64,000 bases of DNA, taken from Octopus sinensis (lineage: Eukaryota). Made by a program: the position numbers and the translations under genes. Of this stretch, positions 14,854 through 63,115 are shown piece by piece; the stretch's first letter is position 1, and every line of letters begins with the position of its first letter. The stretch spans positions 30,504,001 to 30,568,000 of the forward strand of contig NC_043012.1 of assembly GCF_006345805.1 (NCBI RefSeq). Reading direction: 5' to 3'. The notes below the pieces were generated by a model, which ran no database searches, had not been told where the DNA came from, and saw nothing but the letters and a program-made list of their open reading frames with translations.

Positions 14854-15231
14854 AAACGACAGAGAAAATCAAAAAGGCGGAAGAAAGGTGTTTAATTTTC
14901 TCTGTTGTGTGTACTCTTTGTTCGCTGCACCTATTAATATAAATATCTGTATCTTTAGACTTATAAATTCATCATCTGAAAGTCTCCACTTATGCTTTCT
15001 CTCGTTTTGCATCTATGCACTCATATATATTTTGTATTTCATACCCAAACTAATATGTTTAATATTTTCGATGTGTCTAATTTGTTTATCTGCATAATTG
15101 CCCCCCTCTCTCTTTCTATACACACACACCACACACATACACATATATACAACTCACATACAATTGATGCCTACACGTGCCTATCTATATACCTATTTAA
15201 GATATGTGGCTGTATTTGTTTGCTCATGCAT

Positions 15232-15563
15232 ATCTGAGATCCCCTTCGGTCACGACACAGACCCTGCGATTGTACCTTGAAAGTTACCCTCCCAGGCACA
15301 AATCCAGGGAAGCTTGTTTATGGAAGACTAGCAGTCGCCCATGCAAACCTGCTTCCCCTCTCTATGCCACCAGTGTTATCCAAGGGAAAGGCAACAACGG
15401 ATACAGATTGGCACCAGTGACGTCACAACTCATTTCTACAGCTGAGTGAACCGGAGCAACGTGAAAATTAGGGTCTTGCTCAAGAACACAACACGCAGCC
15501 CGGTCCGGGATTCGAACTCACAACCTCACGATCGTAAGCTCGACGCTCTAACCACTGAGCCAT
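15232..15563 (-). mobile_element. tRNA-derived SINE (family C)
   Basis: Minus-strand head ggctcagtggttagagcgtcgagc...gttcgaatccc (A/B boxes), then tgttcttgagcaagac. Near-identical to 53977-54318. Confidence 0.85.
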
Positions 15564-16484
15564 GTATATACAGTGTATATAAATAACATGAAAGGAGGGA
15601 GAAGCATGTACAATATACCTACGCGCACACATTCACACACAAACAAACACGTACAAACACACACACACACACACACATGCATACATATACAAATACAACT
15701 TCTCAACTATGTAATTATTCGTCAGCAATAACATGAAAACAGATTATCAATGAGATGAAGGAACCTAATAAATTGGGGTCAAACCCGCTCTGTGACCCCA
15801 CAAATAACGAGAGGGATATCTTTTAGTATTAAATAACTGACCCTTATTACAATGAAATCTTTTCATTTCTGTTCTTTCTTGAAGTTTATATTTTCACGCC
15901 CGACCAACACATACCACGGCTGTTAGCTTCTACTTCGTTTCGTTCCGTCAAACCTGACAGGGTTTTTCTTTTAAATTCACCTGAAAGGTATCTTTATTTT
16001 TAGATTTGTTTTGTAGTGTTTTGTATGTTGTTTCTTTATATTTCGTGTATTTTCGTGTTTTTATGTTCTTGATATTTTCTCACTGTTTGTTGTATGGACT
16101 CTTGTAGAGTTCATTCGGTACCCCAAAACATTGGACCAGAATCCTGATTTGGGTCTCTTATGCGCGGTCCTGTCTTTTACGATCCTAGGTGTTGCTCTTT
16201 CAGCGGATGTTAAGAGTACAGAAATAGACTTGTTCGACAATTTTTACACACACACACACACACACACGCACACACAAGCAGACAGACACGTACACATATA
16301 AACACACGCACACATATTGCCTATTGCTCATAGTGAAACTCTACTTAGCTTCGAATAATGTTGCATTGTTGATATAAACATAGGCGTTAAGCCTAACTCC
16401 TCATTTCTGAGAAAAGACAAGTTGTTCACGGCACAGTTATGCACAATACACGGTCACTGGTACACACACACACAAAGGGAGGAG

Positions 16485-21479: not shown

Positions 21480-23100
21480 CAACTCCACTTTGTTATATAT
21501 ATAACTTTGATAAGTTTCGGCCAGTATAAGCCCAGGCTATGTCTAACTCAATAGTACCACCTTTTAGTTATATATGGGGTACCATGGCCCACTCTAGCAA
21601 AGAGTTATTGTTGGAGACATATCCCGGTGTTGGAGGTTGGTCCGGGATTTTTAAAAGAAATTTGTCCAGTGAACATTTGAATTTTATGGGTATCCGTTTC
21701 CGATTTGACGTATTTTGGTATGGTATTAAAGAGAGCTGGACCGGCTGAGGTAAAGTAATTGTGACGTAATGTTGTTATGTGTGCTGAGTTCGATTTTTGT
21801 AGTGGGCAGATAGCACGGGGGCCAGGTCTTGGATGGATTTTAAAATTGATGTCAACGTTATTTGTGCAATATTGATGGAATATTTTCCACATTAGCCAAA
21901 TGATGTAGCGCTCCCGACGACGTTGGAGAGAGTAGAGATTGAGTTTTTTAGTCGATATTAATAGTCAATGCCTCGCATGCCGTCTGTTTTTCTTGTATTT
22001 GACCTCTGGAGTGCTTCCACTTTCATAATGAGTTGCTTCGTATGGGGAGATCACAGTGAACAACAGTATTCAAGGTGGGGTCGGGCAAAAGTAGAGTAGA
22101 GAAGGATGATGGTGTAGGCATCTCTAGACCGGAAAGTTCTCAGAATCCAGGAGCACATCTTGCGAGCTAAGTCACCCTTGCGAGCCAAGTCAACCTTGCT
22201 GTTTACGTGGGAACTCCAGCTTAGATTGTTATCGACAATTACTCCAAGGTCTCTGGTGTTGTTGGATGGCACTAGGGAGTCGCCCGAGGGAAGAGCATAT
22301 GGTAATTTCAGAGTCTCCTCTTTTCCAAAGTGGATCAAATCGAACTTCTTCATTTAGAAGCATATTGTCTTTTCCCGCCCATTGGACAATAGCAAATGGA
22401 TCTGATTGAAGGCATGTCCGGTCTCACATGCCGTTTACGGCTTTCTGGAATTTGGAATCATCTGCAAAGATTTTCGCTGTAGAATGTTTGATGTCATCTA
22501 CTGTGTCGTTGATATAAATACTGAAGGGGAGTGGGCCCAACACAGTACACTGTGGGATACCACTACTGACTTTAGCTGAGCTGGATCGTACTCCCTCAAA
22601 CAACAGGTTGGGTTCTGTTTCTCAGGAAACACTTTATCCACTGCAGCAGCTTTCCACGGACTCCAATGTTGGACAGTTTCTTCAGCAGGATCTTGTTGTT
22701 AACTCAGTCAAATGCCTTGCTGAAATCAAGGTATGTGACGTCAGTGTTGGAGCCCTCTCCCAACGCTTTTAAGATGTCATCAAAATGGTGCAAGAGCTGC
22801 GACAGGCAATCCATACCATCACGGAAACCATGCTGGTTGGGGTTCAGCAGATTGTTGTCTTCTAGGAAGGGAGTTATTCGCGATCTCACCACCCTCTCAG
22901 ATACTTTAATGATATGAGAAGTGTGTGAAATTGGACGGTAGTTCTCTGCAAGGGATTTGTTTCTCTTTTTGAAGACTGGAACGACAGACTGGGAAGAAAA
23001 TGAACAGGAATGTAGCCGGCATCAAGTGAGTTTCTCCAGAGCTCAGCTAGAGGCCTTGTGCACAAATTGGAAACTTTAAAAACTCCATTTCTTCCGACAA
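21480..23100 (-). mobile_element. 5'-truncated CR1-group LINE (RT remnant)
   Basis: LLNPNQHGFR..CLSQLL..DVTYLDFSKAFD and RDLGVIVDNNLSWSSHV...LYSTFARPHLEYC, broken by frameshifts. Short tandem duplication near 22160-22200. Confidence 0.88.
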
Positions 23101-25762: not shown

Positions 25763-26460
25763 TCGTTTTCTTATATAAATTTTGTATAGAAATCAAAGGC
25801 TTACTGAGAGTTATTGCCCTTGGATCACAGAGTTTGTAAAGATCTATGTCACAGTTGTGTCCCCTGAACTTTTTTTATTTACGTTAAATTTTCTCGCTCC
25901 GCGTGCGTGTGTTTGTCTGCGTATGTGTACATTTTCTTTTATCTTTTGTTTGTTTCCGACATTTGAATGCGGCCATTCTGGGGCAGCGCCTCGAGGAGTT
26001 TCTGTCCAACAAATCGGCCCCAGGACTTTTTTTTAAAGCTTGGTACTTATTCTTGCAGTCTTTTTTGCCCAACGGTTAACTTGCGGAGTTACGAGAACAC
26101 CGGTCGTCAAGAGTACACACACGCATACAAACATACATACATACATACATACATATGTATAAATGTATATATTCACGACGAGCTTTCGGTTTCCGTCAAC
26201 AAAATCCATTAACAGGATTTTGGTCGACCCGGGGAAAAACTTACCCCAGGTACAACGCAGTGGGACAGAACCTGGTACCAGTTGGCTTGGAGGCAATACA
26301 CAGACATACACACGCACAGTCATATAATGCTTTATCATACATACATACATACATATCGATAGGTTTATATGTGTGCGTGCTTGCACACACACATACATAC
26401 ACACTCCACACACGCATGCATGCATATATACATACACACATACATAATACATACATACGC

Positions 26461-26530
<70 letters not shown>

Positions 26531-28176
26531 AACCTCCATCTGATGCGCTACATCATAGACAGAGTAGTTAAGGAACCTGGCATGGGTGGGGCCCTGATCA
26601 ATTTGGATCAATCGAAAGCCTTCGATAGGGTAGACCATCGATACTTGGAGGCAGTCCTCAGAGCGGCTGGTTTCGGTCCCGTCTTCCGCGGCTGGATAGC
26701 TGCCTTGTGCAGAGGCATCCGTTCGGTAGTTCGCGTAAATGGACATCTATTGAGACCTTTCGACATTGCACGTTCGGTCCGTCAGGGATGCCCCCTCTCA
26801 TTGCTTCTATACGTATTGACTCTCGAGCCACTACTGCGGAAGCTGGCGACTCTGAGGGGCATCCCGCGAGAATTGGGATGCGGGACAAGCGTGTCTGCAT
26901 ACGCGGACGACGTCACCATCACCAAACTAGAACGCATTCTCTTCCGCTTCTTGTGGAAAGAATGCGTCCCGATGGTCAGGCGATCCATTTGCTGTGAACA
27001 CCCGTTAAAAGGAGGGCTGGGCATGCCGTGGTTGATGATGCGCAGACACGCGCTGAGACTGCGACATCTCCGGCTCTATGTAGACGACGGTGAACAGGTG
27101 TGGTCGCCGTTTGTGAGGTACGCGTTCCCGCAGCTCGTCTCCATGACCGAACTGCAGTCGTGGATCAAACCGAATCGACCTTGAGTGACTTCAACACAAC
27201 CAAAGTATTCCATAGGGGATTAGTGGAGGGGAGGTACGACGACGATCTTGGGGCAAACCTGGGCGTCGACGAGGAAACCTGACCCGCCTGTTTGAAACGA
27301 CATTCGGGCCGGGACCTATGGACAACTTCCAGAGATCCCTGGCCTGGCGGTGCTACCGAGAAGCGCTACCCGTTCGGGATAAGCTCTATAAGCATGGCTC
27401 GAGAAACACGGGGCCGACCTGCCCGAGATGCGGGCAGAGCGACGAAACCGTTCTGCACGTAATCGTGCAGTGTCCAACAATCTCCGACCTGTGGGCTTAT
27501 GTCGAACGACTGCTGTCTCGTGTGGGACGTGTCGGTTTAATATCGTCACGCCTCCTTCCTTCAAACGGGAAGGAAGAGCTATTTTTATCATACTTGTTGC
27601 TATGGTGAAAGAATGTATCTGGTGGACGCGCCTGAAAGGATTAGAGACATAGACTTTCATCTCTGGTCAATCTCTCATCAACTTCTTCAAGTATTACTTG
27701 AAGAGGAAAGTGAGAGTAGAGAGGCAAGTTTTGTTTAGTGAATGTTTTAAAAAAAGATGGGTGAATGTAGCAAGGATGGCACGTATGAATGGCGAAGCCA
27801 CCTTGACTATGATTCTATGAACCGTAAAGATTAATACAGAGAGTTGCTTATTTGTAAAAAAAACAAAAAAACATGTGATTTCATTGACCGAGGTTACCGT
27901 GGTCTTTTCCGTAGGCTTTTCTTTCCACGCGTAAACCTCACCTGTCCTCCCCTTTACACTTTATATTGACATTTCTGTGATAACGATCCCTATTGATCAT
28001 TTTTTTTCCTTTCCCTTTTTTTAAAAAATTTTACCCAGCCCCTTTTTTGTCCTCTTTCTTTCCTTTTACGATCCCTTTTGATCGAAAACCAAACCCCCTT
28101 TTTTACCCCCAAAAGAAAAGCTCTACCTTGTAATTTGTCCTGTCTGTGTGCAGCCCTGTGTGGCTAATAAAGAAAC
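26531..28176 (+). mobile_element. Tx1-clade LINE, 5'-truncated and internally deleted, inserted in (TATC)n
   Basis: RT motifs LDQSKAFDRVDH, VRQGCPLS and YADD are joined directly to LERILFRFLW...GGLG. zf-RVT CPRCGQSDETVLHVIVQC. 3' end gtggctaataaagaaac. (TATC)n on both flanks. Confidence 0.92.
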
Positions 28177-33469: not shown

Positions 33470-34862
33470 TTATTATTATTATTATTATCATTATTGAAAT
33501 ATTGGTGTTATGTTTGTTATGTAAGATCTCGTTTCACAAGTTTTCGGTTCAGGTTCATTTACATTCGTATAGTTTTGTTTCCAACCGGAGGCAAGGTTAA
33601 ATCCCGGTTATATAACCACATTCACTCCTTTAAATACAAATGAAATACGTCGTTGGCCCAGTTCATCTTGGGGCTCAAAGGTAGGAATAAAGACAGCTCC
33701 ATTTCGTATTCTATTGTAGGCACTGCTCTTCCTTATTGATGGGGTGCTGGAAGTTGCAATTTTTGCTCGGTGAAGGCGTTTGAATGGTCAAGTGTAAATC
33801 CAATCTAATTAACCAACATAACGAGTTATTAAATCGATGTTCTCAACTATTTAAGGAAATATGCTTAAAATTTCCACACAAAAATCTCACATAACCTTTT
33901 ACTTTGGTATAAATACAAGTAATGCCTATGGTTTACTTTGCCTCCTTACTTTACCTTCTATGGTAAGCACTTCTTTGGCAAACACATTTTTCCCATCTGA
34001 TTCTTTTAAATCTAATCCTTCACTATTGACACTTGGCGTAATTCAGTTTAATTCTGTTTCATTTCATTTTGCTTCAGTTTAAATGTAATAAAACTTGATA
34101 TTTCTCGAAAGGAATGGAGAAGCAGAAAAGTATCTTGTAAATTCTACATGCTGTCGCTATGTACCCTGTTGACAATTCCCCGCTTCCTCATCTAGTTACT
34201 TCAAATCCATTCCTACCGCAGACTAACCAGCAAATAATGTTGTTAGCTAGTAGTGATCTTCCGTAAGCTACGTTCTCACAGACAAACATACTCCAACACT
34301 TGATGACAACTTGACCTCCAAGGACTGAGAATGTGACAAGTATAAATAAAAATCAGGGGAGATAATCTGATGCATGTGTGTTAACTGGAGTTTCATTCCC
34401 ATAAGAACTGATTGTAGAAGGTTCTGAAAAATCTACCGTCATACCTTTCAAGAGAATAGTTGAGGGCTAATTGTTCCATTTATCAATTGATTGTGGTTGA
34501 TTCTGCATGCAAACTATTGCATAGGGTGGAAACAGTTCCTCAGGTCATTCGAAATTTTCGTAAATAAAGTTATGCAAGAATATAATTCTTCATTCTTTGA
34601 TTGCTACAAATATTGATCTGCCTTCCAGTGTGTATGCCAATATGTACATCGAAGACGATGGCAGAATCATTAGCACGTCGGGCAAATTGCAGAGCGACAT
34701 TTAGTCCGTTTTCATGTTCTGAGTTCAAATTGCGCCGAGGTAGACATTGGCTTTTATCATTTAGAGGTCCATAAAATATGTAAAATTTGAACATTGGGGT
34801 CAGTGTAATCAACTTAGCCCCACCTCCAAAATTGCTGATCTTGTGCAAAAATTTGAAACCAG

Positions 34863-38791: not shown

Positions 38792-38979
38792 TTAACAGTG
38801 TATGCAGAAAGGGCTTCCAGGGATCGGCTCGTCTCCCCAGTTGATGGATAATGTGTGGTCTCCAGGTTCGTTCACTTTGTATTGTAGAGCGTAAGCGTTT
38901 CTACCTGAGGCTTTGTACGCGAGTTCAACTGGAGGATTGCCTTTCTCTGAGACCATTCCAACATTCAACATGCCATGAC
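38792..38979 (-). CDS. FLN: Filamin-family gene, terminal coding exon (C-terminal part of the last Ig-like filamin repeat, the dimerisation repeat)
   Basis: Acceptor ccatttttcag|GT. Phase-1 translation GHGMLNVGMVSEKGNPPVELAYKASGRNAYALQYKVNEPGDHTLSINWGDEPIPGSPFCIHC* ends in the filamin-repeat signature WGDxxIPGSPF. AATAAA signals lie downstream. Family-level call only; the paralogue is not identified. Confidence 0.92.
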
Positions 38980-40188: not shown

Positions 40189-40380
40189 CGGCATCCTTCA
40201 CGTCTAAATTAATATTGACAACACGGTTATTGAACGCCTTCTTCAGTCCGGCGCCTTTAGCCAAGACCTTGGTTGCGTCACCACGGAGTTTCTTGGTGGT
40301 CACATGACCGATCTTCTTGTCAACGGTTTCAATAACCAGAGTACTTGTTTCAGTGAATGGACACGGTTTATGACCAGCAC
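40189..40380 (-). CDS. FLN: Filamin-family gene, penultimate exon (hinge 2 plus start of last repeat), 192 nt, phase 1-1
   Basis: ttgttaacag|GTGCTGG...GATGCCG|gtgagtt. Translation GAGHKPCPFTETSTLVIETVDKKIGHVTTKKLRGDATKVLAKGAGLKKAFNNRVVNINLDVKDAG has the hinge-2-like ETSxxxxETVxK and the repeat start DAxKVxAKGxGLKKAF. Splices in frame to 38792-38979. Confidence 0.9.
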
Positions 40381-40659
40381 CTGTTAACAACGGGGAGACG
40401 ATGGAAAAATAAAGAAAAAATGTTAGTCATATTATTATTATTATTTTTTTAGATTGGCAGATTCATTAGTGCGAGGGACAAAATACCATGCGGTATTTCT
40501 TCCGACTCTATATGTTTTCTGAGCTCAAATGCCACTGAGCTGAACTTTACCTTTCATTCTTTCGGGGTTGGTAGAATTAAATTTTAGCCCCATGATGGGG
40601 ATCGATATATTCAGCTAATACTTCCCCGCCCTGAAATTGCTGCCCTAAACCATTATTAT

Positions 40660-41124: not shown

Positions 41125-41560
41125 TCGCCTTTCTTCTTGACTATTCGTATCTCAAAGGGGCACGCAACATCAACTATATAGCATATGTGGTGCACCTTGC
41201 CCACTACCATTAGGTCCAGTCTGTTATGCTCTAACACCTGATCTGTTTTGGATTGGGAAATCCCAGAGGATTTTGCTAGTCTCCGACTCTGCCACTCTCT
41301 GCGGTTTGTGCTCATATCACGTTCTGCCTCTCTCTACCCCCCACTTTTCGCACAGTTTCCTATGTAGCACTTTCGCAACCTGATCGTGTCGCCACAACTT
41401 GTAGTGGTTTGGGGCAAGTCTAGGGCATTCGTTCGTGATATGGGCAATGATTTTGTCCACTCTATTGCAGATGTGGCACAGTGGAGACACTAGCTCATTC
41501 CTAAGGTTGACCCTCCAGTTCGTGGCCAAAGCTTGGTCTTGCACTGCCAGTATAGTGATC
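40660..41560 (-). mobile_element. R4/Dong-like RLE retrotransposon 3' fragment split by an internal (GATA)n expansion
   Basis: [46 protein letters not shown]-[microsatellite]-LWKMKVKAVPIIVGSLG. TAA-type repeats at both ends. Confidence 0.82.
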
Positions 41561-43043: not shown

Positions 43044-43899
43044 ACATACATACACATATACTAGTATATACGACGATCTTTCAGTTTCCGTCTACCAAAT
43101 TTTTTCACAAGGCTTTAGTCCGTCCAAGGCTGTAGATAAGGACACTTGCTCAAGGTGCCATGCAGTGGGACTAAACTCCGAACCATATTCTTCGGAAGCA
43201 AACTTCTTAGCACACAGCCACGTCTGCGCCGATATGTATGTGTGTGTGTCTGTGTGAGTGCGTGTGCATACCCAACCACACACACACACACAAGCAGACA
43301 TTACAGATTGGTGAACTAACGAAAGAAAATGGCATTCTACAAATCTGGTTAAAGTTGTAAGTTCGACACCGCCGCTTTATTGAAAAGTTTGTGGATGCAG
43401 AAAATGCCTTCATTGTCAGATGTACAGGGCCAGGGCCTCCCCCTCCCCACACCATATTATATAAGCATACAAGCAAATATGACTTGGACACATGCTCCAT
43501 GCTTTGACTAATTCGGGGACCCTGCAGTTGAGCCCCTGCACTTGGACAGCATCTCGGTTCTCACATTCTTGACCCGGAGGAATATTTGAGGATGTGACAA
43601 CTTGAAGCAAAGATGTTTGCTCCAGCACTTGGTTGGCATTTATTTTCAGCTGAGTGAACCGGAGCAACGTGATATGATGTGCCTTGCTGAAGGAAACCAT
43701 GTCCCTCTCGGTGCAGGAACCGAATGCCCTACCTTATGATCGTAAAGACAACACTCTAACCGCTAGGCCACGTGCCTTCATGCCTCGGTAGAAATGACAA
43801 GTCATCATCATCATCCTCAACATCATTACTATCGCCACCACAGCCCAACGTCACACCCGCCGCCACCATCTGAGTTATAATGATGAAACTTTCTTACAC

Positions 43900-44185
43900 A
43901 GGTGGAAGCACATGGCCCAATGGTTAGAGCAGCGGACTCGCGGTTTCGAATCTCAGACTGGGCGATGTGTTTATGAGCGAAACACCTAAGATCCACGCGG
44001 CTCCGGCAGAAGGTAATGGCGAACTTCTGCTGATTCCTTCACCACAACTTTCTCTCACTTTTTCCTCCTGCTTCTTGCAGATCACCTGCGACGGACCGGT
44101 GTCCCATCCAGGTGGGGAACCTATACACCACGGAAACCGGGAAACCGGCCCTTATGAGCCAGGCATGGCTCGAGAAGGAACAAAC
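43900..44185 (+). mobile_element. tRNA-derived SINE (family D)
   Basis: Head ggaagcacatggcccaatggttagagcagcggactc...ttcgaatc; tail ggaaaccgggaaaccggcccttatgagcc. Confidence 0.6.
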
Positions 44186-51217: not shown

Positions 51218-51761
51218 TACATATATATACATATATGTTACACACACACAAGCTCCAAACCTATTCCAACGAGACTGGTGTTGGCCTGCGTCAGCAAGAC
51301 TTGTAAGATTTAGTTAAATCGGCAGAAAGAGTGGAGTGAACTTGCTGTGAGGTGTGGAAAAGTCCGATGTCTCGGAGAAAAATTATTGAACCAGTTTTTT
51401 TTTTTGTTCTGGGGTGATAAAAAGATGCGGTATAGTATTATTTTCTCTTTCCTCATTTTTTTTCCCGATGAAGGTAATCTGTCCAAAACGTTCGATTTTC
51501 CACTCGCCATGGTAAGTTTACTGTCCTCTTTCTGTTTTTTTTTTCACTATGTATGTAGGAATATATATTTGTGTGTGTGTATATATGTACATAAGGAACC
51601 GCAAAAGTTGATAAAGGAAAGAATGAAATGAAAAGAAAATGAATAGAAGCATTGCAACAAGGATTAAATAAAATAAATGGAAGCGATGCGTATATATATA
51701 TATAGAATATATGAGCATGAATGTGTGTGTGTGTATGTGTCTGTATTCTTATATGACTCAC

Positions 51762-51773
51762 CAGCTTTCGATG
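51762..51773 (-). CDS. Candidate 12-nt micro-exon (array unit 6), phase 1: (A)SKA
   Basis: ctacatctctcttgcag|CATCGAAAGCTG|gtgagt. Confidence 0.62.
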
Positions 51774-51906
51774 CTGCAAGAGAGATGTAGGAACAAAATG
51801 TGAAACATATAAAGAAAATTTCAAACGAGCTTTGAATTGGAATATACTGTCTATATTGTGTGTAGGTATGTATGTGCTATATTATATATATATCTTATAT
51901 ATATGC

Positions 51907-51972
<66 letters not shown>

Positions 51973-52169
51973 TATAATATATAGATATCTATATATATAT
52001 ATTATATATACATATACTATATATATCTGTATATAATAAATATGTACATATAAGTTTATGGATATATATGGTATATGTATATATAACAATATGAACAAGA
52101 ATGGAGAAAATCCCTCTTTGATGGTTACACGATACATTACCGACAATCGTTTAAATGCAAAACCTCTAC

Positions 52170-52261
<92 letters not shown>

Positions 52262-53199
52262 AGAGAGAGAAAGGAGAGAGAGAGAGAGAGAGAGAGAGGC
52301 AGATAACAATGTTTTCATATAGTTTATGATTTTTCTCTTCCAGTTATCATCATGGCTTGGATTGGTGTGGGGTTTAGTGTCGAAACGCATACAAGAATGG
52401 CGAATGTGAAGTTTTTGCTGCACTCTCTCTCTATGCACTAACATACACACACCTTAGTGTCCAGACATGCTTAAGTATTACTTCCAGCTTCCATCATTAT
52501 TTGATTCAGTATGTAATAAAACGAACACAATATGTTACGTTTTCTGTTATTCACGAAAAAACGCTGCAGAAGGAAACTGTTCACGTGACTTAAGTTACTG
52601 AGGACGAGGCTTAGCTAGAGTGTTGCAAATCTGTGGTAGATGTCATTTACCGTTGGAAAATCGAATGAAGATTTGGCAGTAATCTTTATCGTCGTTATCA
52701 TCGTCATCTTTCTTAATATTATTTCATAAAGACGTCATTTATATATATTGAAATGCATAGATAACGAGTGAAAATAACATTAATATCAAAATAATTATAA
52801 TGATATAAACATAATGAAATAAAGACGAAATCAATGTTGGAGTTACATGTATTGTAAAAGATATAACAAAGATATAACTAACAGATGTGATAGAGATAAT
52901 CAAAAATATTTGATAAGAATAATGAGAAGGAAAGCGATACGGTGTTTATAGCAACAGGAAGCAGAAATTGGAAAAGAATAAAAGGAACAGTAGAAATTGG
53001 TAAATAAAATGGTAATAGAAAAGAATGAAAGGAAATTAAGTTGGAACAATGCGAGAATGTAAAGAACGTGATTAGAAGCAATGGGTATTGGCGAGAGATA
53101 AATAGATAGAAAGAAATAGGCAGGCAGACTGATAGAGAGAAACGATGAAGGGAGAGAGAAAGTGGCGAGAAAGAAGAAAGAGACATAGAATGAGAAAGG

Positions 53200-53202
53200 T
53201 AT

Positions 53203-53237
<35 letters not shown>

Positions 53238-53420
53238 TATATATATATATCAAGAGAGAGGAGAGAGAGAGAGAGAAAGATATATATATATATAAAGAGA
53301 GAGAGAGAGAGAGAGAAAGATATATATATATATATATAAAGAGAGAGAGAGAGAGAGAGAAAGATATATATATATATAAAGAGAGAGAGAGAGAGAGAGA
53401 GAAAGATATATATATATATA

Positions 53421-53457
<37 letters not shown>
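53200..53457. repeat. Compound (GA)n-aaga-(TA)n minisatellite, about 5 units
   Basis: Repeated aaagagagag...gaaagatatatatatat units. Confidence 0.85.
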
Positions 53458-53463
53458 GCTAAC

Positions 53464-53472
53464 CAACTTGTG
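53464..53472 (-). pseudogene. Decayed paralogue of the micro-exons (unit 5), with CAT in place of the acceptor CAG
   Basis: gctttcat|CACAAGTTG|gttagc. The upstream aaacattgtaaatatttc aligns with aaacatcgtaaacatttt of unit 4. Confidence 0.4.
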
Positions 53473-53976
53473 ATGAAAGCAATAATGCAAATGAGATAAG
53501 GAAATATTTACAATGTTTCCAAGAAAGCCTGGAGTTGAAGAATATTTTCTTCACGTTTCGCACACACACACACACACACACGTACACACACACACCACAC
53601 ACACACACATACGCACGCACGCATACATATATATCGTGTGATATATTTTTTGATAAAAAGGTGCAAAAACGAATGGAAGTTTCAAGCCTAATAAAGCATA
53701 CTGCATAATTAAAGAGGACTCGAAGAGATTAGGCGGCATTATAGTTCTTAGAATAACGGTGAGGTTCAGAATTTGGAATTTAGGCCAGAAAAATTTTATG
53801 TAAACAGAGCAAAATACCTGTACTACATATTACTTTGCCTGAGTACGCACACACGTATGTATATATGTATACGTTATTGTTCATTATAATTTAAGGCAAC
53901 TACAAATGATTGTATAATTTGTTATATGATTTATGTGACGTAAAGAAGCTCGTTTGCTTGTATTGTTATTAATATA

Positions 53977-54318
53977 TGCTGAGACTCCCTTCGGTCATAA
54001 ATGACCATGGGATCGCACCTTGAAAGTTACCCTCCGAGGTACAAGTCCTAGCGAGCTTGTTTATGGAAGACCAGCATTCGCCCATGCATACCGGCCTCGC
54101 TTCTCCACGCTACCAGTGTTATCCAAGGGAAAGGCAAAGGAGCCGATACAGCTTGGCACCAGTGATGACGTCGCAACTCATTTCTACAGCTGAGTGAACT
54201 GGAGCAACATGAAGTAAAGTGTCTTGCTCAAGAACACAACACGTAACCCGGTCCACGATTCGAACTCACAATCTCACGATCGTAAGCTCGACGCTCTAAC
54301 CACTGAGCCATGCGCCTT
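53977..54318 (-). mobile_element. tRNA-derived SINE (family C)
   Basis: Same body as 15232-15563. Partial copy at 43640-43782. Confidence 0.85.
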
Positions 54319-54326
54319 CACACACA

Positions 54327-54380
<54 letters not shown>

Positions 54381-55097
54381 GTATTACATATGATAGTTTA
54401 CTAGTTAGCTTTAGATGTTTCTCTTAAGGCCCAGTTAGGCAGCAGATTGAGTGTAGTAATTTCTCAAAGATAATTTGTTTGTCATACATAATCTGTCGTT
54501 GGTAATTTACCGAAACTATCTCCACGAATTATTATCCTCCTCACCGTCACATGTAAGACATCAACATTTATTTTTTTACTATTATTTGTTAAAAGAACTG
54601 TTAATTCTTGTTATTAAACTTAAACCCTTTAAGCTTGAGATTATAACGAAATAAATTATGGAATATAATTGCAATAACTTTGAAAATGCAAATAATATTA
54701 ACTAATTATTATAATAATAGTAACAATGATGGCAAATATGATCATAGTAATCATTATAATTGCTATTATTAATATTATTATAAGCATAATGAAAATGAAT
54801 AGGTAAGCAGAAGTAAGTATTGGAGTTATGTGTATTTCAGTCGGGGGAGTGATGTATTATATGGCAAAATTAAGGAGCGAAAGATCAGTGTTTTGCAGCA
54901 CGAAACAGAGATGTAAGTGTATAGCCATCCTTATTTGATATATTAAATGAACGAAGAGAGGGTGACGAGAAGCGATGCGAGAACGGAAAGTAAATGAATG
55001 AAAGCAATGCCAGGATTTGAGGAAAATTGATGGAAGTAAAACAAAGAATGAATGAATTTTAAATGATATAAGTAAAGAACATGGAAGTTATATATAT

Positions 55098-55131
<34 letters not shown>

Positions 55132-55236
55132 AGAGAGAGAGAGAGAGTGAGAGAGAGAGGCAGAGATTGTGTGAGACAGTAAGATAAAGATATATATAGA
55201 AATAGAGTGAGTGACAGAGAGAGAAATTAGACTCAC

Positions 55237-55248
55237 CAATTCGATATG
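55237..55248 (-). CDS. Candidate 12-nt micro-exon (array unit 4), phase 1: (A)YRI
   Basis: ctatatttttttacag|CATATCGAATTG|gtgagt. Confidence 0.62.
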
Positions 55249-56171
55249 CTGTAAAAAAATATAGTGCAGAAGATATAAAATGTTTACGATGTTTTTAGGT
55301 GAACTAACAATTGAAATATACCGTTTTCGTGTTCCGTAGAATATATTTTCAAAGTTTTCGTTGCCAATTAAAATGTATGACTCTAACTCGGATTCTTCCA
55401 GCATTTTTCAATGGCAGACATTTCTGAATGTGTTGTGTGAATTTTAGATAGCATCGTGTGAAAAAAAAAAAAAAAGCATTCGATACGAATGGATAGAGTA
55501 ATGTATAGGCATAAGATAATGCAAACCACGGATCATCCATCGTGGTTGCTATCAGAATCCCTCCAAAAACTAAATATCGTTTGACGAAATCATTTATTCA
55601 ATTATATCCTAGAAAATAAATGATTTGTCTCTGACTGTGATTTATAAGATGGTAATTAGGTTGATTAATCGACGTTCTCTACATATATGATTATGGTTAA
55701 AATTTATACTTAACCAGGGTGTAAGGACTATAATACGAGTATGTATGCAACACATATGTGTATACATAATATATGTATATACATATATGTAAACACACGT
55801 ATTATAAATTCTATTATTAAAATTATTGTAATCATATAAAGGTATAAATTAGGATAAAAGTAATAAATTAGAAAAATATTGACACTGCAGTTATAATAAA
55901 CGAGCGGTTTGGTTTGAATATTTGAATGTATTTTAATATGGGCCACAAGAGTATTGCAGGATTTGTTGTTTGCAGTACAGAACAGATGCAAAAGTAAAGA
56001 ACCATTAAAAATTGGTAAAAAAAAGAAAAAAGAATTAAATGGAAGGAATGCGAGAATGGATAGAAAGATGAATGGAAGTTCTGTAAGAATTGGAAGTGAC
56101 TGAATTGAAACAAATCAAGAATGAAAATGAATAAAAGGTATGTATGTGTATGCATATATACGTTATATATA

Positions 56172-56247
<76 letters not shown>

Positions 56248-56603
56248 ATCTATATATATATATATGTATATATATATATGTATATATATAAATATGTATA
56301 TATATAGACCTACCATAAAAGGCTAATATTGGTAAAATGAGACATACTTATCTACATGGCCGAAACAGCTGTAAGATGTAATCTATACTTATATTTATAT
56401 TTACTTATATTTATATTCTCTTTTATATGTATTCTACTTATTATACAACATTACTCTTTTATGTACACTTATTTATGTACACTGATTTGTTCTGCTTTTA
56501 CATGTTTAACCCTACACCTATGTGGTGGTTTAATAAAGTATGTGATTGAGTATTATCTGGTAATTGATATTTGATTTAGATGTATTTCTCCATTTTCTTA
56601 TCT

Positions 56604-56644
<41 letters not shown>

Positions 56645-56815
56645 ATATATATATATATATTATATATATATATATATATTATATATATATATAATATATA
56701 TATATATATTATATATATATATATAGATATATATATATATATATAAATATGTATATGTAAAAGGAAAGAAGAGAGTGAGATAGTGATTAAGAGAGATAGG
56801 AAGAAAGAGACTCAC

Positions 56816-56827
56816 CAGGTCGAGGAG
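56816..56827 (-). CDS. Candidate 12-nt micro-exon (array unit 3), phase 1: (A)PRP
   Basis: ctatatctttttcag|CTCCTCGACCTG|gtgagt. Confidence 0.65.
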
Positions 56828-58794
56828 CTGAAAAAGATATAGCGAAGAAGATATGAAATATGTATGACATTTTCAAGTGAACTTTGAACTGGAATATGCT
56901 ACATTTCTTAGAATTATATTTATATAGAGGCGAGTATACATTCCGAGTTTACGTATTTCATACCAAGAGAATGAGATACGTTTTCTGATGCTATAAAGCT
57001 TTCACATACGACAGTTTGTGTGTTGGCTTTCACCAGCGAACAAGAGTTAATAAGGATCAGATGGAACGTCCAGTAATCGCTCCAAAGTGGTTTATATGAT
57101 CAATATAACTGATCGTCGATGAATTATATCATCCTCAAATCTTTCACACTCTCATTGTGGTGTTATAACGATGATCAAGGTCATGATCTTCGAATATAAG
57201 AAATCAGTATGTATTATTAATATTATTTCCTAAAGGATAACAATATCGTAATTTAACTTTTGGCTCAGAGATTAATTATACTGTAATACATTACGGATGA
57301 GAATAATAATAATAATAATAAGCATTATTATTATGAATATCATTATAATTGTTTTGGGTTTTGGCACAAGGTCAGCCATATTAAGGACAGGGGTTAGTTA
57401 CATCGGCCCAGTACACAACTGGTACTTTATTTTATGGACGCCGAAAGGATGAAAGGCAGAGTAGATCTCGGCAGAATTTGAGCGCAGAACGTAAAGAACC
57501 AGATGAAATGCTATCAAGCACTTTGTACGACGCACTAAGGATTCTGCCTGTCCATCGCCTTAATAATAACGGCAATAATAATAGTAATAATAATAATAAC
57601 AGCAATTTGATAATAATAATAGTAATTGTTGCTATTTTTATTATTAATATTTTAAACATATTTTAACATGGGAAATCGAATTATATAAATACATTGCATT
57701 ATATCTTTAGTAATCGGGCGATTCGCTTTTAGCGATGCATCTTAATGCAAAAATACGAAGCGTTAAAGTAGCAGGAAGGTTTGCAATATAGAACAGAGAG
57801 AGAAATAACGAACCTTAATAATTGGTGAATGAAAAGGAAGTAAATAGGAACGATGCAAGAAGGAAAAGTAAATGAATAGAAGCAAAGAAGCGAGATAAAG
57901 ATGTGTTGTTGGGAAATACTTTGTAGTAAGAGATATCGGCAATGTGAGACATTGTCGTTGAATGAAGAACAGACTGAGTTATAATAATGATAACTGCAAC
58001 AGCTGACACTATAGCATGATCGGCTTTCTTTATTCAGAATGCACTGTAACTGACGCAACGAAACACGTTTCCTGCTGCTCTATAACAATATCACATATGT
58101 CGTCAGTTTCTTTTCTGGTTTAAGTTCTTACGAGCAAGACTTAGCTGGAGCAACGCGTTCTGATGAAATTACATCAAATTGGTTAGCGATTACATTTAAA
58201 TATATTATAGAAGATAATAATAATGATATAGTAATTATTATAGTAAAATTATTATCAGCATTGTTATTATTATTATTAATGGTAATAATAATAATAATAA
58301 TAATAATGATAATAATAATAATAGATAATAATATTTTAGAGGTAATGAAAACATTTATTAAAAATCTAAATATTGGAGGTATGTCTACAGTAAACGGGTA
58401 ATATGTCTTCGAAGAATGCATACCAATGCAAAGAATAGTGATGCGAAAAGCAGTAATGAAGAATGCAGAAAGAAACAGAAACGAAATGTAAAGAAATGTA
58501 AAGAATGGTAAACGAATACGAATGAAAAGAAATAGGAACAATGCAAGAATGAAGAGAAATAGGAACAATGCAAGAATGAAAAGTAAATGAATGAAAGCAA
58601 AGAAGCGAGATAGAGATGTACCTAGACAAGCATTTCGTAATGATAAATATCGGCAATGCGAAACATAGTTGTAGTAGTAGTTGTAACAAGGGCTTAGCAA
58701 CTAAATCAGCCCTGAACAGGTTGGTTTATTGTAAAAGACATTCCGGTCATGACCACTTCATGTGATTTCTATGTATGTATATATATATATATAT

Positions 58795-58868
<74 letters not shown>

Positions 58869-59393
58869 GGGGGGGGTAGTTATCCGATATGTTCTGTATG
58901 ATTGAGTGACAGAGAAAAGCTTGGCTTGTATTTCAAGCAGGAAGAATGGTCCTCTTCTTGATGTGTTGGCTGTTGCATCAAAATAACCAGATAGGATAAC
59001 GCCTAATAAATTCTGTTGAGAATTGGAATCCTCTGATTAACATAAGGTGTGATAATTTACCTCGTAATTATCCACAAATTCTTGTAATCATGATCATCAT
59101 CATGATTAAAATAAAATACACTAAATATTTGGGTTATTTTAAGGGACCTATTTCCTTCGCAAAAAATGTATTTTTATGCAAAAGTAAAGAATGCAGAAGC
59201 CATACTGTTTTGGAAAGATGAAAGAGAATTTGAAAGAGCGAGTTGTAAATGAGAAAATGGAAAAGAATGAATATTGCAATGTGAGAATGAAAGTATATGA
59301 GAGAGAAGCAATGCATTTATGCGTGTGTATATATATATATTTATATATACACGTATGTATGTATATATATTTATGTATAGTCTTTAGACTCAC

Positions 59394-59411
59394 CAGGTCG
59401 ACAGTTAGGTG
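59394..59411 (-). CDS. Candidate 18-nt micro-exon (array unit 2), phase 1: (A)PNCRP
   Basis: ctatatttcttgcag|CACCTAACTGTCGACCTG|gtgagt. Confidence 0.65.
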
Positions 59412-59800
59412 CTGCAAGAAATATAGGGAAGAAGAAGATATGAAATATGTATGACGTTTTCAGATTAACATTTGTATACGGATACACTTTCTCACTGTCC
59501 GCTTACACCCACCCACCCACACACGCACACATACACAGAGACATGCACGCGCGCGCGGAAGCACGCACGCACAAAGAGATGAACAGTTGCACAAGGTGCC
59601 GCACTGAGTTGAAGCTGGAACCAAATCGCTGCGAAGCTGTCCTCTTAGCGGGATGTTCGTCAGCCCTGCGTTATATAATAGATTAAATATAAGTTGTAAA
59701 TATGTACTTTACATGCGACGCAACGCAGAACAAATCCTGCACCCAAACAGTGTTGATACCGCTGCTCTCATTATATACACACGCATATATATATATATAT

Positions 59801-59832
<32 letters not shown>

Positions 59833-59919
59833 ATATATATATACAAAAAAAAAAAAAGAAGTTCGAAGACGAAGTAAAAAAGAATGTATTAAGATTAATA
59901 TTGAAAATAGAAGGTAAAC

Positions 59920-59957
59920 GCCTTTACATTTCGAGCATAGGCTCATCTACAGAAAGA
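59920..59957 (-). ncRNA. Minimal hammerhead-like motif (PLE-type), degenerate
   Basis: cuuu-CUGUAGA-u-GAGC-cuau-GCUC-GAAAU-GUA|aagg. Confidence 0.4.
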
Positions 59958-60087
59958 AGAGACGAAGAAAGGGAAAAGGTGAAGACAGAAAAGAACAAAC
60001 GGGCGTCAAATCGCCTCAGAAGGATTATTAATGCATTGCTGTAATTGAGTATACAAAATACGTGAGTCCTAAGAGACATTATATTTC

Positions 60088-60144
<57 letters not shown>

Positions 60145-60155
60145 TGTGTGTGTGA

Positions 60156-60203
<48 letters not shown>

Positions 60204-60559
60204 CAGAGAGAGAGAGAGAGAGAGAGAGAGGAGCGGAGAGAGTGCGTGAGAGGAAAGTTTGTTTTCATTATGAACACTGAAAGAGAAACAATGGACTCTG
60301 GGACATTATATATGCATATATAAATGAGTAATGTCTGCTTTTCACCGTACATCTTCGAATCCGGCGGTAAATTGTGAATGGCCATCTCCACACAAACTAA
60401 AAACAATAGAAGCGAGTTTTCATGTCAAAATATTGAAACGAGGCTTTTCTATGGATTTAATAGGATAAGATGGCTACAAAGATTGGAGTTAGTTTCAGTT
60501 GAAATAAATGGCGTTCTATATAGATTAATAATTATCATCAGATAAGGAATACTAAAAGG

Positions 60560-61016
60560 AATGTACATATATATATTAATTATATATATATGTATATTAT
60601 ATATGCATTATATATATATATTATATGTATGTATTATATGTATCATATATATATTATGTATGCATGTACATTATATATATATATATCATATATATGTTAT
60701 ATATATATCATATATATATTATATATATTATATCATATATTATATATATCATATATATATTATATATATCATATATATATCATATATATATATTATATAT
60801 ATCATATATATATATCATATATATATATATATCATATATATATGTATATTATATATTATATATGTATGTTTGTATATTATATATATTATATATATATGTA
60901 TGTTATATATATATATTATTATATATGTATATATATATATGTATATTATATTTATATATATATTATATACATATATATATATATATTATATATATTACAT
61001 TAATTATACATATATT

Positions 61017-61051
<35 letters not shown>

Positions 61052-61200
61052 AATTTGGACATAGTCACGTATGAAACGTATAAAAACCCTGTATAAACGT
61101 GCGTATGTATGTATGTGTGTATATATATATTTATATATATATATATGAATATATATATATATATATATGAATATATATGCGCGTATATTTGCATATATGG
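60560..61200. repeat. Degenerate (TA)n microsatellite field
   Basis: Direct reading. Comparable TA/CA/GA/TATC/TACA tracts occur every 0.5-1 kb and generate most ORFs in the track. Confidence 0.95.
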
Positions 61201-61998
61201 ATATATATCTTTGTGTATGTGTATATATGGCTAGATGTATGTATATATTTTTAATATGTATATATGTATTCGTTGATGGAGTAAAAAATATCAGCATGCA
61301 TGGTGGAAAGAAACACATGGAGATAAACTTGGAATATCATCTAATTCTTAGAGCTGCATTTTGAAAGATCTTTGAAGGGAAAATCACACACACACCTAAT
61401 CAACATACGAACAAAAAAACTATCAATTCCCTTGCTAGGATATTCATACTAACAAGATTGAATCTGGTAAACATTTATCGTCTAGCAACGATATCAGTAT
61501 CCGGAGATTTATGATATCGGCAAAAAATTAGTGTAAAGATATGTCTAGACAATTATATGGCATTGATAAATATCGGTTATATCGAATGTTGCTATTGGAA
61601 CTGTTGTCGATTAGTTTCCAGGTGAACCCTGAACAGGTAAGTCCAAAACTAAAGAGGTGCCAGTCAAAATCAACTTGTTTTCTTTTTGTAAGATGATCGT
61701 ATTATTCAGAGACTTTTATGCCTTGAAGGCTGCATAGAGTGTTATGAAGTGCTGTGGAGATTTTCTCGCTGCATTGACTGGAAACTCTATGTAATGGGTG
61801 GGAAAAATGCGATGCAGGTTATCAGTCGACGAGACACTCGAGACACTCAACACGAAGAACTTCGCCGCTAGAATGAAACCCCAAAACATTGAAGGGAAGG
61901 TCCGTTCTAATGGACGTTTTCAGGGCCCGTCTGTCTGTCTATATCTATGTATGAATGTTCATATATTTGCATACACATATATACGTGCGAGTATGTAA

Positions 61999-62057
<59 letters not shown>

Positions 62058-62549
62058 GTTTACATATATATATAAATATATATGTATATATGTGTGCATG
62101 TATGTATATAAGTATATACATACATACCTACGTGTACACACATACGCACACACACACACACGTTTGTGTGTGGTGTGTGTATAGTCATACTAGTTTGAAT
62201 CTGTTTCTTCTGAGATACGTTTCTGCATTTATATAAAGATTCCATATAGCACGTTAGGTCGTTCTCAGCTATTGCAAGTAAAAACCCAGCTGGGGCATCG
62301 CATTCTGTTGAAACTTGCCCCATTCATTACTACCATATACTTTCTATGAAGGATAAAAGGATTTCATTGATAGTTTATGTCAAGATTCTGTATTAATTAT
62401 CGCTATCTTCATCCATCATCATCAACATCATCATAACATGCCAGAAATCAACATTTATTGTTAATAATATTTCTGAAAGAAAACTGCTATTCCGTTACAC
62501 AACCTAAACTATTTCGGGTTAGAAATTATATTGAAATATATTAAGGAAG

Positions 62550-62631
<82 letters not shown>

Positions 62632-62877
62632 CATAGTTAAAATTTAAAAAATGTTTTAAAAAATATCAAGAAATACTGGAGTTATGACTATTCTAAACGG
62701 GCCATTTCCTTTGAACAATGCAATCGAATGCAAAAAAGAAGGAGCGAAAAAGCAATACGGAGATTTGCAATCCGAAAGAGAAGTAGAAGGAACGATCCAT
62801 AAAAAATTGGTAAACGAAGAATAAATGAATGAAAATTCTGGAAGCAATGCATGTATATATAGATATATTTGACTTAC

Positions 62878-62889
62878 CAGGCCGAGACT
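62878..62889 (-). CDS. Candidate 12-nt micro-exon (array unit 1), phase 1: (E)SRP
   Basis: tatatctcttgcag|AGTCTCGGCCTG|gtaagt. Flanks are homologous to the other array units. Confidence 0.65.
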
Positions 62890-63115
62890 CTGCAAGAGAT
62901 ATAGCGAAGAAAATATGAAACATGTACGATGTTGTTCAAGAATGCTGTGAATGGAAACTGGCTTTCTTTCCATTCCGATTCATATGTTTTTTGCCTAGAA
63001 AAAAATCATGCCATATACTTTTGGAAAATCGTCTCAAACGATGAATTCTGGACGCATTTCAGCAGTTAAACATACTAAATGCATAAGGTGAATCCTATCT
63101 GAGAGACAGCATTTT

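What the first reader, a model, noticed from the sequence alone, without database searches (positions are those of the whole stretch)
51740..62930. Tandemly duplicated array of frame-preserving micro-exons
Six paralogous units lie on the minus strand, 1.6-3.5 kb apart. They share about 60 nt of upstream intron (tttcatat..tcttcgctatatctcttgcag-like) and a GTGAGT/GTAAGT donor. The five intact units enclose only 12, 18, 12, 12 and 12 nt. Splice sites and multiple-of-3 length are retained while the exon interiors diverge. In phase 1 they encode SRP, PNCRP, PRP, YRI and SKA, and the Arg codon varies only at position 3 (CGG/CGA), as expected under coding selection. Concatenated they stay open: (E)SRP-APNCRP-APRP-AYRI-ASKA-G. 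Micro-exon multiplication by duplication of whole exon-plus-intron units resembles schistosome micro-exon genes. It could give up to 32 combinations, or a mutually exclusive set. I know of no description of this in cephalopods but cannot search. The sequence pattern is observed; function is inferred.
Basis: partly seen in the sequence, partly recalled or inferred. Interest (0 to 1): 0.87.

Follow-up and report, generated by a model that had tools for sequence, protein, structure and literature searches.

The report
Tandem micro-exon array in filamin hinge
Inside the last long intron of an octopus-like filamin gene, a 12-nucleotide exon and its intron were copied in tandem; five copies still look like usable in-frame mini-exons that could lengthen the protein's flexible hinge in small steps, but no RNA evidence could be obtained.

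Summary
Six paralogous units lie on the minus strand between 51.7 and 63.0 kb. Five enclose 12, 18, 12, 12 and 12 nt between a strong acceptor and a GTRAGT donor; one (U5) has decayed.

These five are the only such configurations on that strand of the 64-kb window. Their essential splice positions show 0/35 changes, against 18% change in the flanks (p = 0.0025).

The host gene is a filamin. The next two exons downstream (40380-40189 and 38979-38792) encode hinge 2 and the C-terminal filamin repeat. The first has a phase-1 acceptor that fits the micro-exons' frame. All 32 inclusion combinations read through to the filamin stop.

The array sits at the junction between the preceding filamin repeat and hinge 2. 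The acceptors resemble published micro-exon architecture: long AG-free zone, UGC at the 3' splice site, branch point at -27 to -30.

The best reading is cassette micro-exons that arose by tandem duplication and tune hinge length (confidence about 0.6).

No transcript or orthologue data could be reached, so use of these exons is inferred. The schistosome micro-exon-gene analogy is superficial, and the codon argument has no statistical weight.

The parts
62878..62889 (-). Micro-exon U1, 12 nt (AGTCTCGGCCTG). Phase 1 gives (E)SRP. Acceptor tctcttgcag, donor GTAAGT.
59394..59411 (-). Micro-exon U2, 18 nt (CACCTAACTGTCGACCTG). Phase 1 gives (A)PNCRP. Carries a 6-nt in-frame insertion relative to the other units. 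Donor GTGAGT.
56816..56827 (-). Micro-exon U3, 12 nt (CTCCTCGACCTG). Phase 1 gives (A)PRP. Donor GTGAGT.
55237..55248 (-). Micro-exon U4, 12 nt (CATATCGAATTG). Phase 1 gives (A)YRI. Donor GTGAGT.
53452..53551 (-). Decayed unit U5. The core is still homologous (E 2e-17), but the branch-point A, the acceptor AG and donor positions +3 and +6 are lost (…tttca--tcacaagttgGTTAGC).
51762..51773 (-). Micro-exon U6, 12 nt (CATCGAAAGCTG). Phase 1 gives (A)SKA. Donor GTGAGT. Its flank is as diverged as U5's, yet all signals are intact.
62890..62968 (-). Conserved upstream intronic element of U1: yUnAy branch-point candidate at -27, AG-free zone of 53 nt, 80% pyrimidine tract, UGC directly before the AG. 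Equivalent elements lie at 59412-59493 (U2), 56828-56906 (U3), 55249-55327 (U4) and 51774-51853 (U6).
62642..62850 (-). Downstream intronic homology block 'B' of U1. Further copies lie at 58341-58639, 57691-57950 (an orphan copy from an internal sub-duplication, with no exon core), 55882-56129, 54801-55069, 52881-53109 and 51590-51699. All are on the minus strand and only inside the array.
40189..40380 (-). Filamin exon A, 192 nt, with phase-1 acceptor (ttaacag|GT GCT GGT) and phase-1 donor. Encodes hinge 2 (GAGHKPCPFTETSTLVIETVDKKIGHVTTKKL) and the start of the last filamin repeat.
38792..38979 (-). Filamin exon B: the rest of the C-terminal filamin repeat, ending …IPGSPFCIHC and TAA.
   Evidence: PF00630, E 5.5e-09; P0001 confirms the A-B junction

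Best explanation
These are cassette micro-exons of a filamin gene, multiplied by tandem duplication of a unit of exon plus intron.

Gene context. The gene runs on the minus strand. Its last intron is more than 23 kb and continues beyond the window. It separates the exon that ends the penultimate Ig repeat (…ITG, outside the window) from the exon that encodes hinge 2 and the C-terminal dimerisation repeat.

Anatomy of each unit. Each intact unit has a branch point about 28 nt upstream, a 75-85% pyrimidine tract in an AG-free zone of more than 50 nt, a YAG acceptor, 12 or 18 nt of exon, and a consensus G|GTRAGT donor.

Effect of inclusion. Every exon is a multiple of 3 and ends in G. Inclusion of any subset therefore keeps the frame and regenerates the Gly codon at the junction with exon A. 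Each included exon adds 4 or 6 residues (ESRP, APNCRP, APRP, AYRI, ASKA) to the N-terminal end of hinge 2. The linker between the rod and the dimerisation domain can thus grow by 0 to 22 residues.

Shown:
- the sequence anatomy and paralogy;
- frame compatibility;
- position in the protein;
- excess conservation of the splice signals.

Inferred:
- that the spliceosome actually uses these exons;
- that use is alternative (probably independent cassettes, possibly neural/Srrm-type regulated);
- that the functional effect is tuning of hinge length, flexibility or local motifs.
For: - Six paralogous units, none elsewhere in the window. Homology is collinear beyond the core.
- Only six micro-exon-like AG…GTRAGT configurations exist on both strands of 64 kb, and five are the units.
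- Essential splice positions show 0/35 deviations, against 47/265 in the 60-nt upstream flank (Fisher p = 0.0025).
- The neutral probability of retaining all seven positions in five units is about 2e-4 to 2e-3.
- Internal control: U5 and U6 are equally diverged in the flank (18/53 each). U6 keeps every signal and a 12-nt length, whereas U5 has lost the branch-point A, the AG and two donor positions.
- The only indel inside an exon is 6 nt. Flank indels are mostly 1 nt.
- Downstream exon A has a phase-1 acceptor, and all 32 inclusion combinations read through to the filamin stop.
- The array lies at the boundary between the penultimate Ig repeat and hinge 2. Solved filamin Ig domains align only from residue ~33 of exon A, and relatives run …ITG straight into the hinge.
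- A yUnAy sits at -27 to -30. The AG-free zone is 52-73 nt (background median 11). Pyrimidine content is at least 75% (4% of background sites). UGC lies within 27 nt in 4 of 5 units. This matches the published cis-code of eMIC-dependent micro-exons (PMC8797185).
- True dispersed repeats in the same window recur 4 and 13 times on both strands. The unit does not.
Against: - No transcript, protein or orthologous genomic evidence could be obtained.
- The only related protein on record (P0001, 127 aa, 93% identical) starts TGAGHKP…, with no micro-exon residues. This is compatible with skipping being the default, and equally with an artefactual model start, because the intron also ends aca|g.
- No relative shows an insert at this position.
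- The five units are paralogues, so their shared features are not independent. The conservation tests also carry ascertainment bias, because the sites were noticed for being conserved.
- Openness of the frame is weak evidence for 66 nt; frame 0 is open too.
- The upstream constitutive exon is outside the window, so its phase is inferred.
Confidence: 0.6

Rival explanations
1. Relic array. One ancestral micro-exon or pseudo-exon was duplicated with its intron, but the copies are now unused or included only at noise level. Their signals persist because too little time has passed, or because gene conversion homogenises the cores.
For: U5 shows that units can decay. No relative and no database protein shows an insert at this site. 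Micro-exons generally need dedicated factors for inclusion, so good consensus sites alone do not guarantee use. The exon interior is no better conserved than the intron.
Against: Unit flanks have diverged to about 67% pairwise identity and block B to about 70%. Even so, 35/35 essential splice positions, the branch-point A, the AG-free zone and 3n length survive in five units (neutral P about 1e-3). U6 is as diverged as the dead U5 and is fully intact. Gene conversion would also homogenise the exon interiors, which it has not.
Confidence: 0.25
2. An intronic tandem repeat (macrosatellite or TE-derived) whose splice-like motifs are fortuitous. It was never an exon.
For: The region is extremely repeat-rich, with TA, GA, GT and ATT microsatellites and SINE inserts. 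The repeat unit is larger than the core. Dfam/RepBase and the rest of the genome could not be searched.
Against: The core is absent from the other ~52 kb of the window, whereas real dispersed repeats recur 4-13 times on both strands. All copies share the gene's strand. Conservation peaks exactly at splice signals. The chance rate of such a configuration is about 1 per 128 kb of strand, and this one lies in a phase-compatible intron at a domain boundary. No Rfam family matches and there is no consensus structure.
Confidence: 0.1
3. A mutually exclusive exon cluster, with one unit chosen per transcript through docking-site/selector RNA pairing as in arthropod Dscam-type clusters.
For: A conserved ~50-nt element lies upstream of every unit, which is where selector sequences sit in known clusters.
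Against: No common complementary partner was found in the 23.6 kb of pre-mRNA available. The best 'docking' windows are GT microsatellites pairing non-specifically. All exons are 3n, so co-inclusion is not penalised by frameshift. Introns of 1.6-3.5 kb give no steric exclusion.
Confidence: 0.05

Closest known systems
Tandemly duplicated alternative exons (tandem exon duplication; e.g. human tandem-duplicated exon substitution events, PMC9741552)
   Same: Paralogous exons with flanking intron, in tandem, in the same orientation, frame-compatible, inside one gene.
   Different: Known cases were found by exon similarity, involve normal-sized exons and are mostly mutually exclusive pairs. Here the exons are 12-18 nt, so paralogy is visible only through the introns. 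There are 5-6 copies, and additive inclusion is possible.
Fast skeletal troponin T (TNNT3) exons 4-8 (PMC2447309; combinatorial splicing reported by Breitbart et al. 1985, cited there)
   Same: A run of five very small, phase-compatible, alternatively spliced exons. They encode a variable, unstructured segment of a cytoskeletal/contractile protein, with 2^5 theoretical combinations.
   Different: The TnT exons encode an acidic N-terminal segment. In the text I read, they are not described as recent tandem duplicates with alignable introns. Their expression is demonstrated, whereas here it is not.
ELAV/Hu hinge micro-exons (bee elavl2; up to eight alternative exons in Ciona, PMC8553928)
   Same: Alternative micro-exons confined to an unstructured hinge between folded domains, expanding isoform number.
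   Different: Different gene family. Those exons are not described as a tandem-duplicated paralogous series.
Schistosome micro-exon genes (MEGs; 10.1101/2023.06.21.545858)
   Same: Symmetric micro-exons that are multiples of 3, separated by long introns; variation by exon skipping.
   Different: MEGs are whole genes of 10-20 micro-exons. They encode secreted proteins with a signal peptide and are specific to Schistosomatidae. Here there is a local array inside a conventional intracellular filamin gene.
eMIC (Srrm3/4)-dependent neural micro-exons (PMC8797185)
   Same: Length of 27 nt or less, long AG-exclusion zone, UGC next to the 3' splice site, UCUC-containing pyrimidine tract, good branch point.
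   Different: Dependence on Srrm and neural specificity are untested. The 5' splice sites here are consensus-strong.
Vertebrate filamin hinge-1 alternative exon (own knowledge: FLNB/FLNC isoforms lacking hinge 1)
   Same: Alternative splicing alters a filamin hinge and hence rod flexibility.
   Different: That is a single exon of about 24 codons at hinge 1 (between repeats 15 and 16). This is a micro-exon series at hinge 2.

Membership tests
Tandemly duplicated alternative (cassette) exons | Paralogous units of exon plus flank, in tandem, in the same orientation, within one gene | tested here: met
   Six units on the minus strand only. Intron homology is collinear.
Tandemly duplicated alternative (cassette) exons | Intact splice signals on each copy | tested here: met
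   Five of six units have YAG, GTRAGT, a branch point, a pyrimidine tract and an AG-free zone. U5 has decayed.
Tandemly duplicated alternative (cassette) exons | Frame compatibility with the flanking constitutive exons | tested here: met
   The downstream exon is phase 1, and all 32 combinations are open to the stop. The upstream exon is outside the window, so its phase is inferred from the relatives' …ITG|G junction.
Tandemly duplicated alternative (cassette) exons | Observed inclusion in transcripts | not testable with these tools
   No cephalopod transcripts or proteins could be reached.
Schistosome micro-exon genes (MEG) | Most of the coding sequence is built from 10-20 symmetric micro-exons | tested here: not met
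   The adjacent exons are conventional (192 and 188 nt) and encode a filamin repeat.
Schistosome micro-exon genes (MEG) | Secreted product with an N-terminal signal peptide; lineage-restricted family | tested here: not met
   The host is a filamin-type cytoskeletal protein. The N-terminus itself is outside the window.
Schistosome micro-exon genes (MEG) | Micro-exon lengths that are multiples of 3, with symmetric phase | tested here: met
   Lengths are 12, 18, 12, 12 and 12 nt, all phase 1-1.
eMIC/Srrm3/4-dependent micro-exons | Cis-code: exon of 27 nt or less, long AG-exclusion zone, UGC near the 3' splice site, UCUC-rich tract, strong branch point | tested here: met
   The AG-free zone is 52-73 nt. 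UGC lies directly before the AG in U1, U2 and U6 and at -21 in U4, but not in U3. UCUC occurs only in U1 and U6. Criteria are from PMC8797185.
eMIC/Srrm3/4-dependent micro-exons | Neural-enriched, Srrm-dependent inclusion | not testable with these tools
   Needs expression or perturbation data.
Filamin (host gene) | Filamin/ABP280 Ig repeats, with a C-terminal repeat preceded by a hinge | tested here: met
   PF00630 matches. PDB filamin repeats match at E down to 8e-22, from residue ~33. The alignment with filamin C-termini agrees.
Filamin (host gene) | N-terminal calponin-homology actin-binding domain | not testable with these tools
   The upstream exons lie beyond the window end. The closest relatives of ~830 aa contain filamin repeats only.
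Docking/selector mutually exclusive exon clusters | A selector upstream of each variant, complementary to one docking site | tested here: not met
   Only non-specific pairing with GT microsatellites was found within 40381-64000. A site outside the window is not excluded.
Recursive splice sites / RS-exons | A 5' splice site (GTRAGT) regenerated at the AG junction | tested here: not met
   The exons begin AGTCTC, CACCTA, CTCCTC, CATATC and CATCGA, not GT.

The most novel reading that the evidence does not exclude
A lineage-specific 'hinge rheostat'. A single 12-nt micro-exon proliferated by tandem duplication into five independently spliceable cassettes. They give up to 32 filamin isoforms that differ by 0-22 residues at hinge 2, possibly under the neural Srrm/eMIC programme. 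This would be a clear example of micro-exon birth by duplication of exon plus intron, visible only through intron paralogy and therefore missed by exon-similarity surveys.
Probability: 0.3. Interest if true: 0.7.

Novelty: new member of a known kind. Interest (0 to 1): 0.5.

Why it matters
How micro-exons originate is poorly understood. Surveys of tandem exon duplication rely on exon similarity, so they cannot detect 12-nt exons. If these units are spliced, they show that micro-exons can multiply by segmental duplication, and that paralogous introns are the way to find such arrays.

They would also give filamin a graded, modular way to change the linker between its rod and its dimerisation domain. 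That property affects actin-network geometry and mechanosensing.

The claim is directly testable with existing cephalopod RNA-seq or long-read data. If no junction reads exist, the locus is still useful as a case of strong-consensus pseudo-exons persisting in a long intron.

Tried and rejected
- Protein database search with micro-exon peptide plus exons A and B: only a 127-aa partial model (P0001) without micro-exon residues.
- Contig look-up for P0001: nothing on record.
- Exhaustive representative search: 991 filamin-repeat proteins, no cephalopod orthologue, and no insert at the junction in the relatives examined.
- JGI metagenome scans by protein and by unit motif: no relatives, no matches. 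These are uninformative because cephalopod DNA is evidently absent there.
- Literature: seven full-text searches, five of them aimed at finding such an array. No description of a filamin or cephalopod micro-exon array was found. The scallop muscle paper has nothing on filamin isoform structure.
- Docking/selector RNA pairing: rejected, only GT-microsatellite artefacts.
- Structured RNA (snoRNA or miRNA cluster): rejected. Rfam hits are sub-threshold and fall on TA/TG microsatellites, none on the cores. The consensus fold is -1.27 kcal/mol. No tRNA genes were found.
- Recursive splicing: rejected, because no GT follows the acceptor.
- Dispersed SINE-like element: disfavoured by the in-window control.
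- Technical slips: a fuzzy-regex scan timed out. An ungapped identity profile was distorted by indels and replaced by gapped analysis. A first frame check padded the split codon wrongly and was corrected.

Full report
**1. Observation**

Reading the minus strand of 51500-63100 shows the six units as described. A profile built from them recovers exactly six copies in the 64-kb window. All are on the minus strand (E 1e-25 to 2e-17), and the next best hit has E > 1.

The putative exons are:
- U1 62889-62878 (12 nt)
- U2 59411-59394 (18 nt)
- U3 56827-56816 (12 nt)
- U4 55248-55237 (12 nt)
- U6 51773-51762 (12 nt)

U5 (about 53475-53456) has lost the acceptor AG, and its donor reads GTTAGC. Donors are GTGAGT in four units and GTAAGT in one. 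The units as cut for comparison are 1579-3478 nt long.

**2. Is it more than chance?**

I scanned both strands of the whole window for YAG, then 3-30 nt, then GTRAGT, with at least 70% pyrimidine in the 20 nt before the acceptor. There are six such sites, and five are the units.

The units are paralogues, so the real question is retention of signals.
- In the gapped alignment, the seven essential splice positions (AG and GT.AGT) show 0/35 deviations from consensus in the five intact units. The 60-nt upstream flank shows 47/265 (Fisher p = 0.0025).
- Using each unit's own flank divergence, the chance that all five keep all seven positions is about 9e-4. Block resampling of alignment columns gives 2e-4.
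- These figures carry ascertainment bias, because the sites were noticed for being conserved.
- There is a useful internal control. U5 and U6 are equally diverged in the flank (18/53 each). U6 retains every signal and the 12-nt length. U5 has lost the branch-point A, the AG and two donor positions.
- The exon interior (13/60) is as diverged as the flank (p = 0.47).
- The one indel inside an exon is 6 nt (U2). Flank indels are mostly 1 nt.

**3. Repeat architecture**

Homology extends beyond the core.
- Collinear blastn matches of 70-81% link the units.
- A downstream intronic block ('B') follows each core: 62850-62642, 58639-58341, 56129-55882, 55069-54801, 53109-52881 and 51699-51590.
- One orphan copy lies at 57950-57691, from an internal sub-duplication.
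- Microsatellites and two SINE-like inserts have since expanded the units.

As a control for the 'dispersed repeat' idea, the two SINE-like inserts recur 4 and 13 times across the window on both strands. The core and block B occur only in the array, on one strand.

**4. Host gene**

Two minus-strand exons downstream are real coding exons.
- Exon A (40380-40189) has acceptor ttaacag|GT GCT GGT and donor G|gtgagt.
- Exon B (38979-38792) ends …IPGSPFCIHC-TAA.
- They match the Pfam filamin repeat and solved filamin Ig domains, with E down to 8e-22.
- A 127-aa database protein (P0001, a UniParc entry, 93% identical) confirms the A-B splice.

The exhaustive representative search returns 991 filamin-repeat proteins. 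The closest C-termini are 46-52% identical. They include ~830-aa repeat-only proteins, one of them from the leech Helobdella.

Alignment places the array precisely.
- Relatives end the preceding repeat with …SPFK.x(I/V)TG and continue directly with the hinge (…GK..ETS..VETV.K…).
- The split Gly codon at the start of exon A is that conserved Gly.
- PDB Ig domains align only from about residue 33 of exon A, so its first ~32 residues are hinge 2.
- The micro-exons would therefore insert at the N-terminal end of hinge 2, at a domain boundary.

**5. Frame**

Exon A needs one base from the preceding exon (phase 1). Every micro-exon ends in G and is a multiple of 3. With a G-ending upstream exon (inferred from the conserved Gly), all 32 inclusion combinations read through to the filamin stop. 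The inserts are ESRP, APNCRP, APRP, AYRI and ASKA.

Openness alone is weak evidence, because frame 0 is open too. The match of phase to the real downstream exon is the informative part.

**6. Splice-signal anatomy**

- Each intact unit has a yUnAy at -27 to -30 (TTCAT, TTTAT or TTCAC) and an AG-free zone of 52-73 nt. The background median for YAG sites in the window is 11.
- Pyrimidine content is 75-85%, reached by 4% of background sites.
- UGC lies directly before the AG in U1, U2 and U6, and at -21 in U4.
- This is the architecture reported for eMIC/Srrm-dependent micro-exons: long AG-exclusion zones, UGC near the 3' splice site, UCUC-rich tracts and strong branch points (PMC8797185).
- It suggests regulated, possibly neural, inclusion. 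This is inference.

**7. Alternatives examined**

- A docking/selector mechanism for mutual exclusivity found no specific partner in 23.6 kb of pre-mRNA.
- No Rfam family and no consensus structure explain the conserved core.
- Recursive splicing is excluded by the exon starts.
- The MEG analogy fails on gene architecture and product type (criteria from 10.1101/2023.06.21.545858).
- Better analogues are TNNT3 exons 4-8 (PMC2447309), the ELAV hinge micro-exons (PMC8553928) and tandem exon duplication generally (PMC9741552).

**8. What is missing**

No cephalopod transcript, protein or orthologous DNA was reachable. No paper describing such an array was found.

P0001 begins TGAGHKP. The T matches the conserved …ITG of relatives, which suggests direct joining of the upstream exon to exon A, that is, skipping of all units. 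However, the intron itself ends aca|g, which would also give T. The point is therefore ambiguous.

**9. Verdict**

The sequence pattern is real and non-random. Its most economical explanation is a set of genuine, alternatively used micro-exons created by tandem duplication in the filamin hinge-2 intron (confidence about 0.6). A relic, unused array is the main rival (about 0.25).

If real, this is a new member of a known kind: tandemly duplicated alternative exons, and micro-exons in linkers. It is notable for exon size and copy number. The claim is readily testable with existing RNA data.

Noticed in passing
window 53975-54329 (-), also 15234-15566 (-), 43611-43781 (-), 43902-44005 (+): A ~355-nt SINE-like element whose 5' end looks tRNA-related (ggctcagtggttagagcg…gttcgaatc). 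It is inserted between U4 and U5 and has four copies in the window. ARAGORN calls no intact tRNA.
   Followed up: partly
window 57385-57564 (-) and 12 further sites on both strands (e.g. 14691-14855, 34654-34813, 40452-40595): A second, more abundant SINE-like repeat of ~180 nt. One copy lies inside the U2-U3 interval and another lies just upstream of filamin exon A.
   Followed up: partly
window 26369-27608 (+); 22051-22603 (-); 334-618 (+); 41317-41544 (-): Decayed non-LTR retrotransposon fragments: RVT_1 at E 2e-13, zf-RVT at E 8e-10, and weaker pieces elsewhere.
   Followed up: partly
window 13391-13600 (+): An ORF fragment with a Mos1/mariner-type HTH_48 domain (E 1.5e-05), probably a mariner-like transposase relic.
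   Followed up: no
window 10427-10526: A run of exactly 100 N, which is an assembly gap.
   Followed up: no
unit cores, about -60 relative to each exon versus the donor (e.g. 56886-56881 with 56817-56812 in U3): Weak 6-bp complementarity between the upstream element UUCACU and the donor region G|GUGAG. In U1 the donor G-to-A change (GTAAGT) is matched by a C-to-U change upstream. The total alifold energy is only -1.27 kcal/mol, so this may be chance.
   Followed up: partly
window 57691-57950 (-): An orphan copy of the downstream intronic block B with no micro-exon core in front of it. It is either an internal sub-duplication or a seventh unit that lost its exon.
   Followed up: partly
P0001 (UniParc UPI0006952734) versus window exon A start at 40380: The only close relative on record begins with T before GAGHKP. 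This fits the conserved …ITG end of the preceding repeat, but also the intron's last bases, aca|g. The source of that residue is unresolved.
   Followed up: partly
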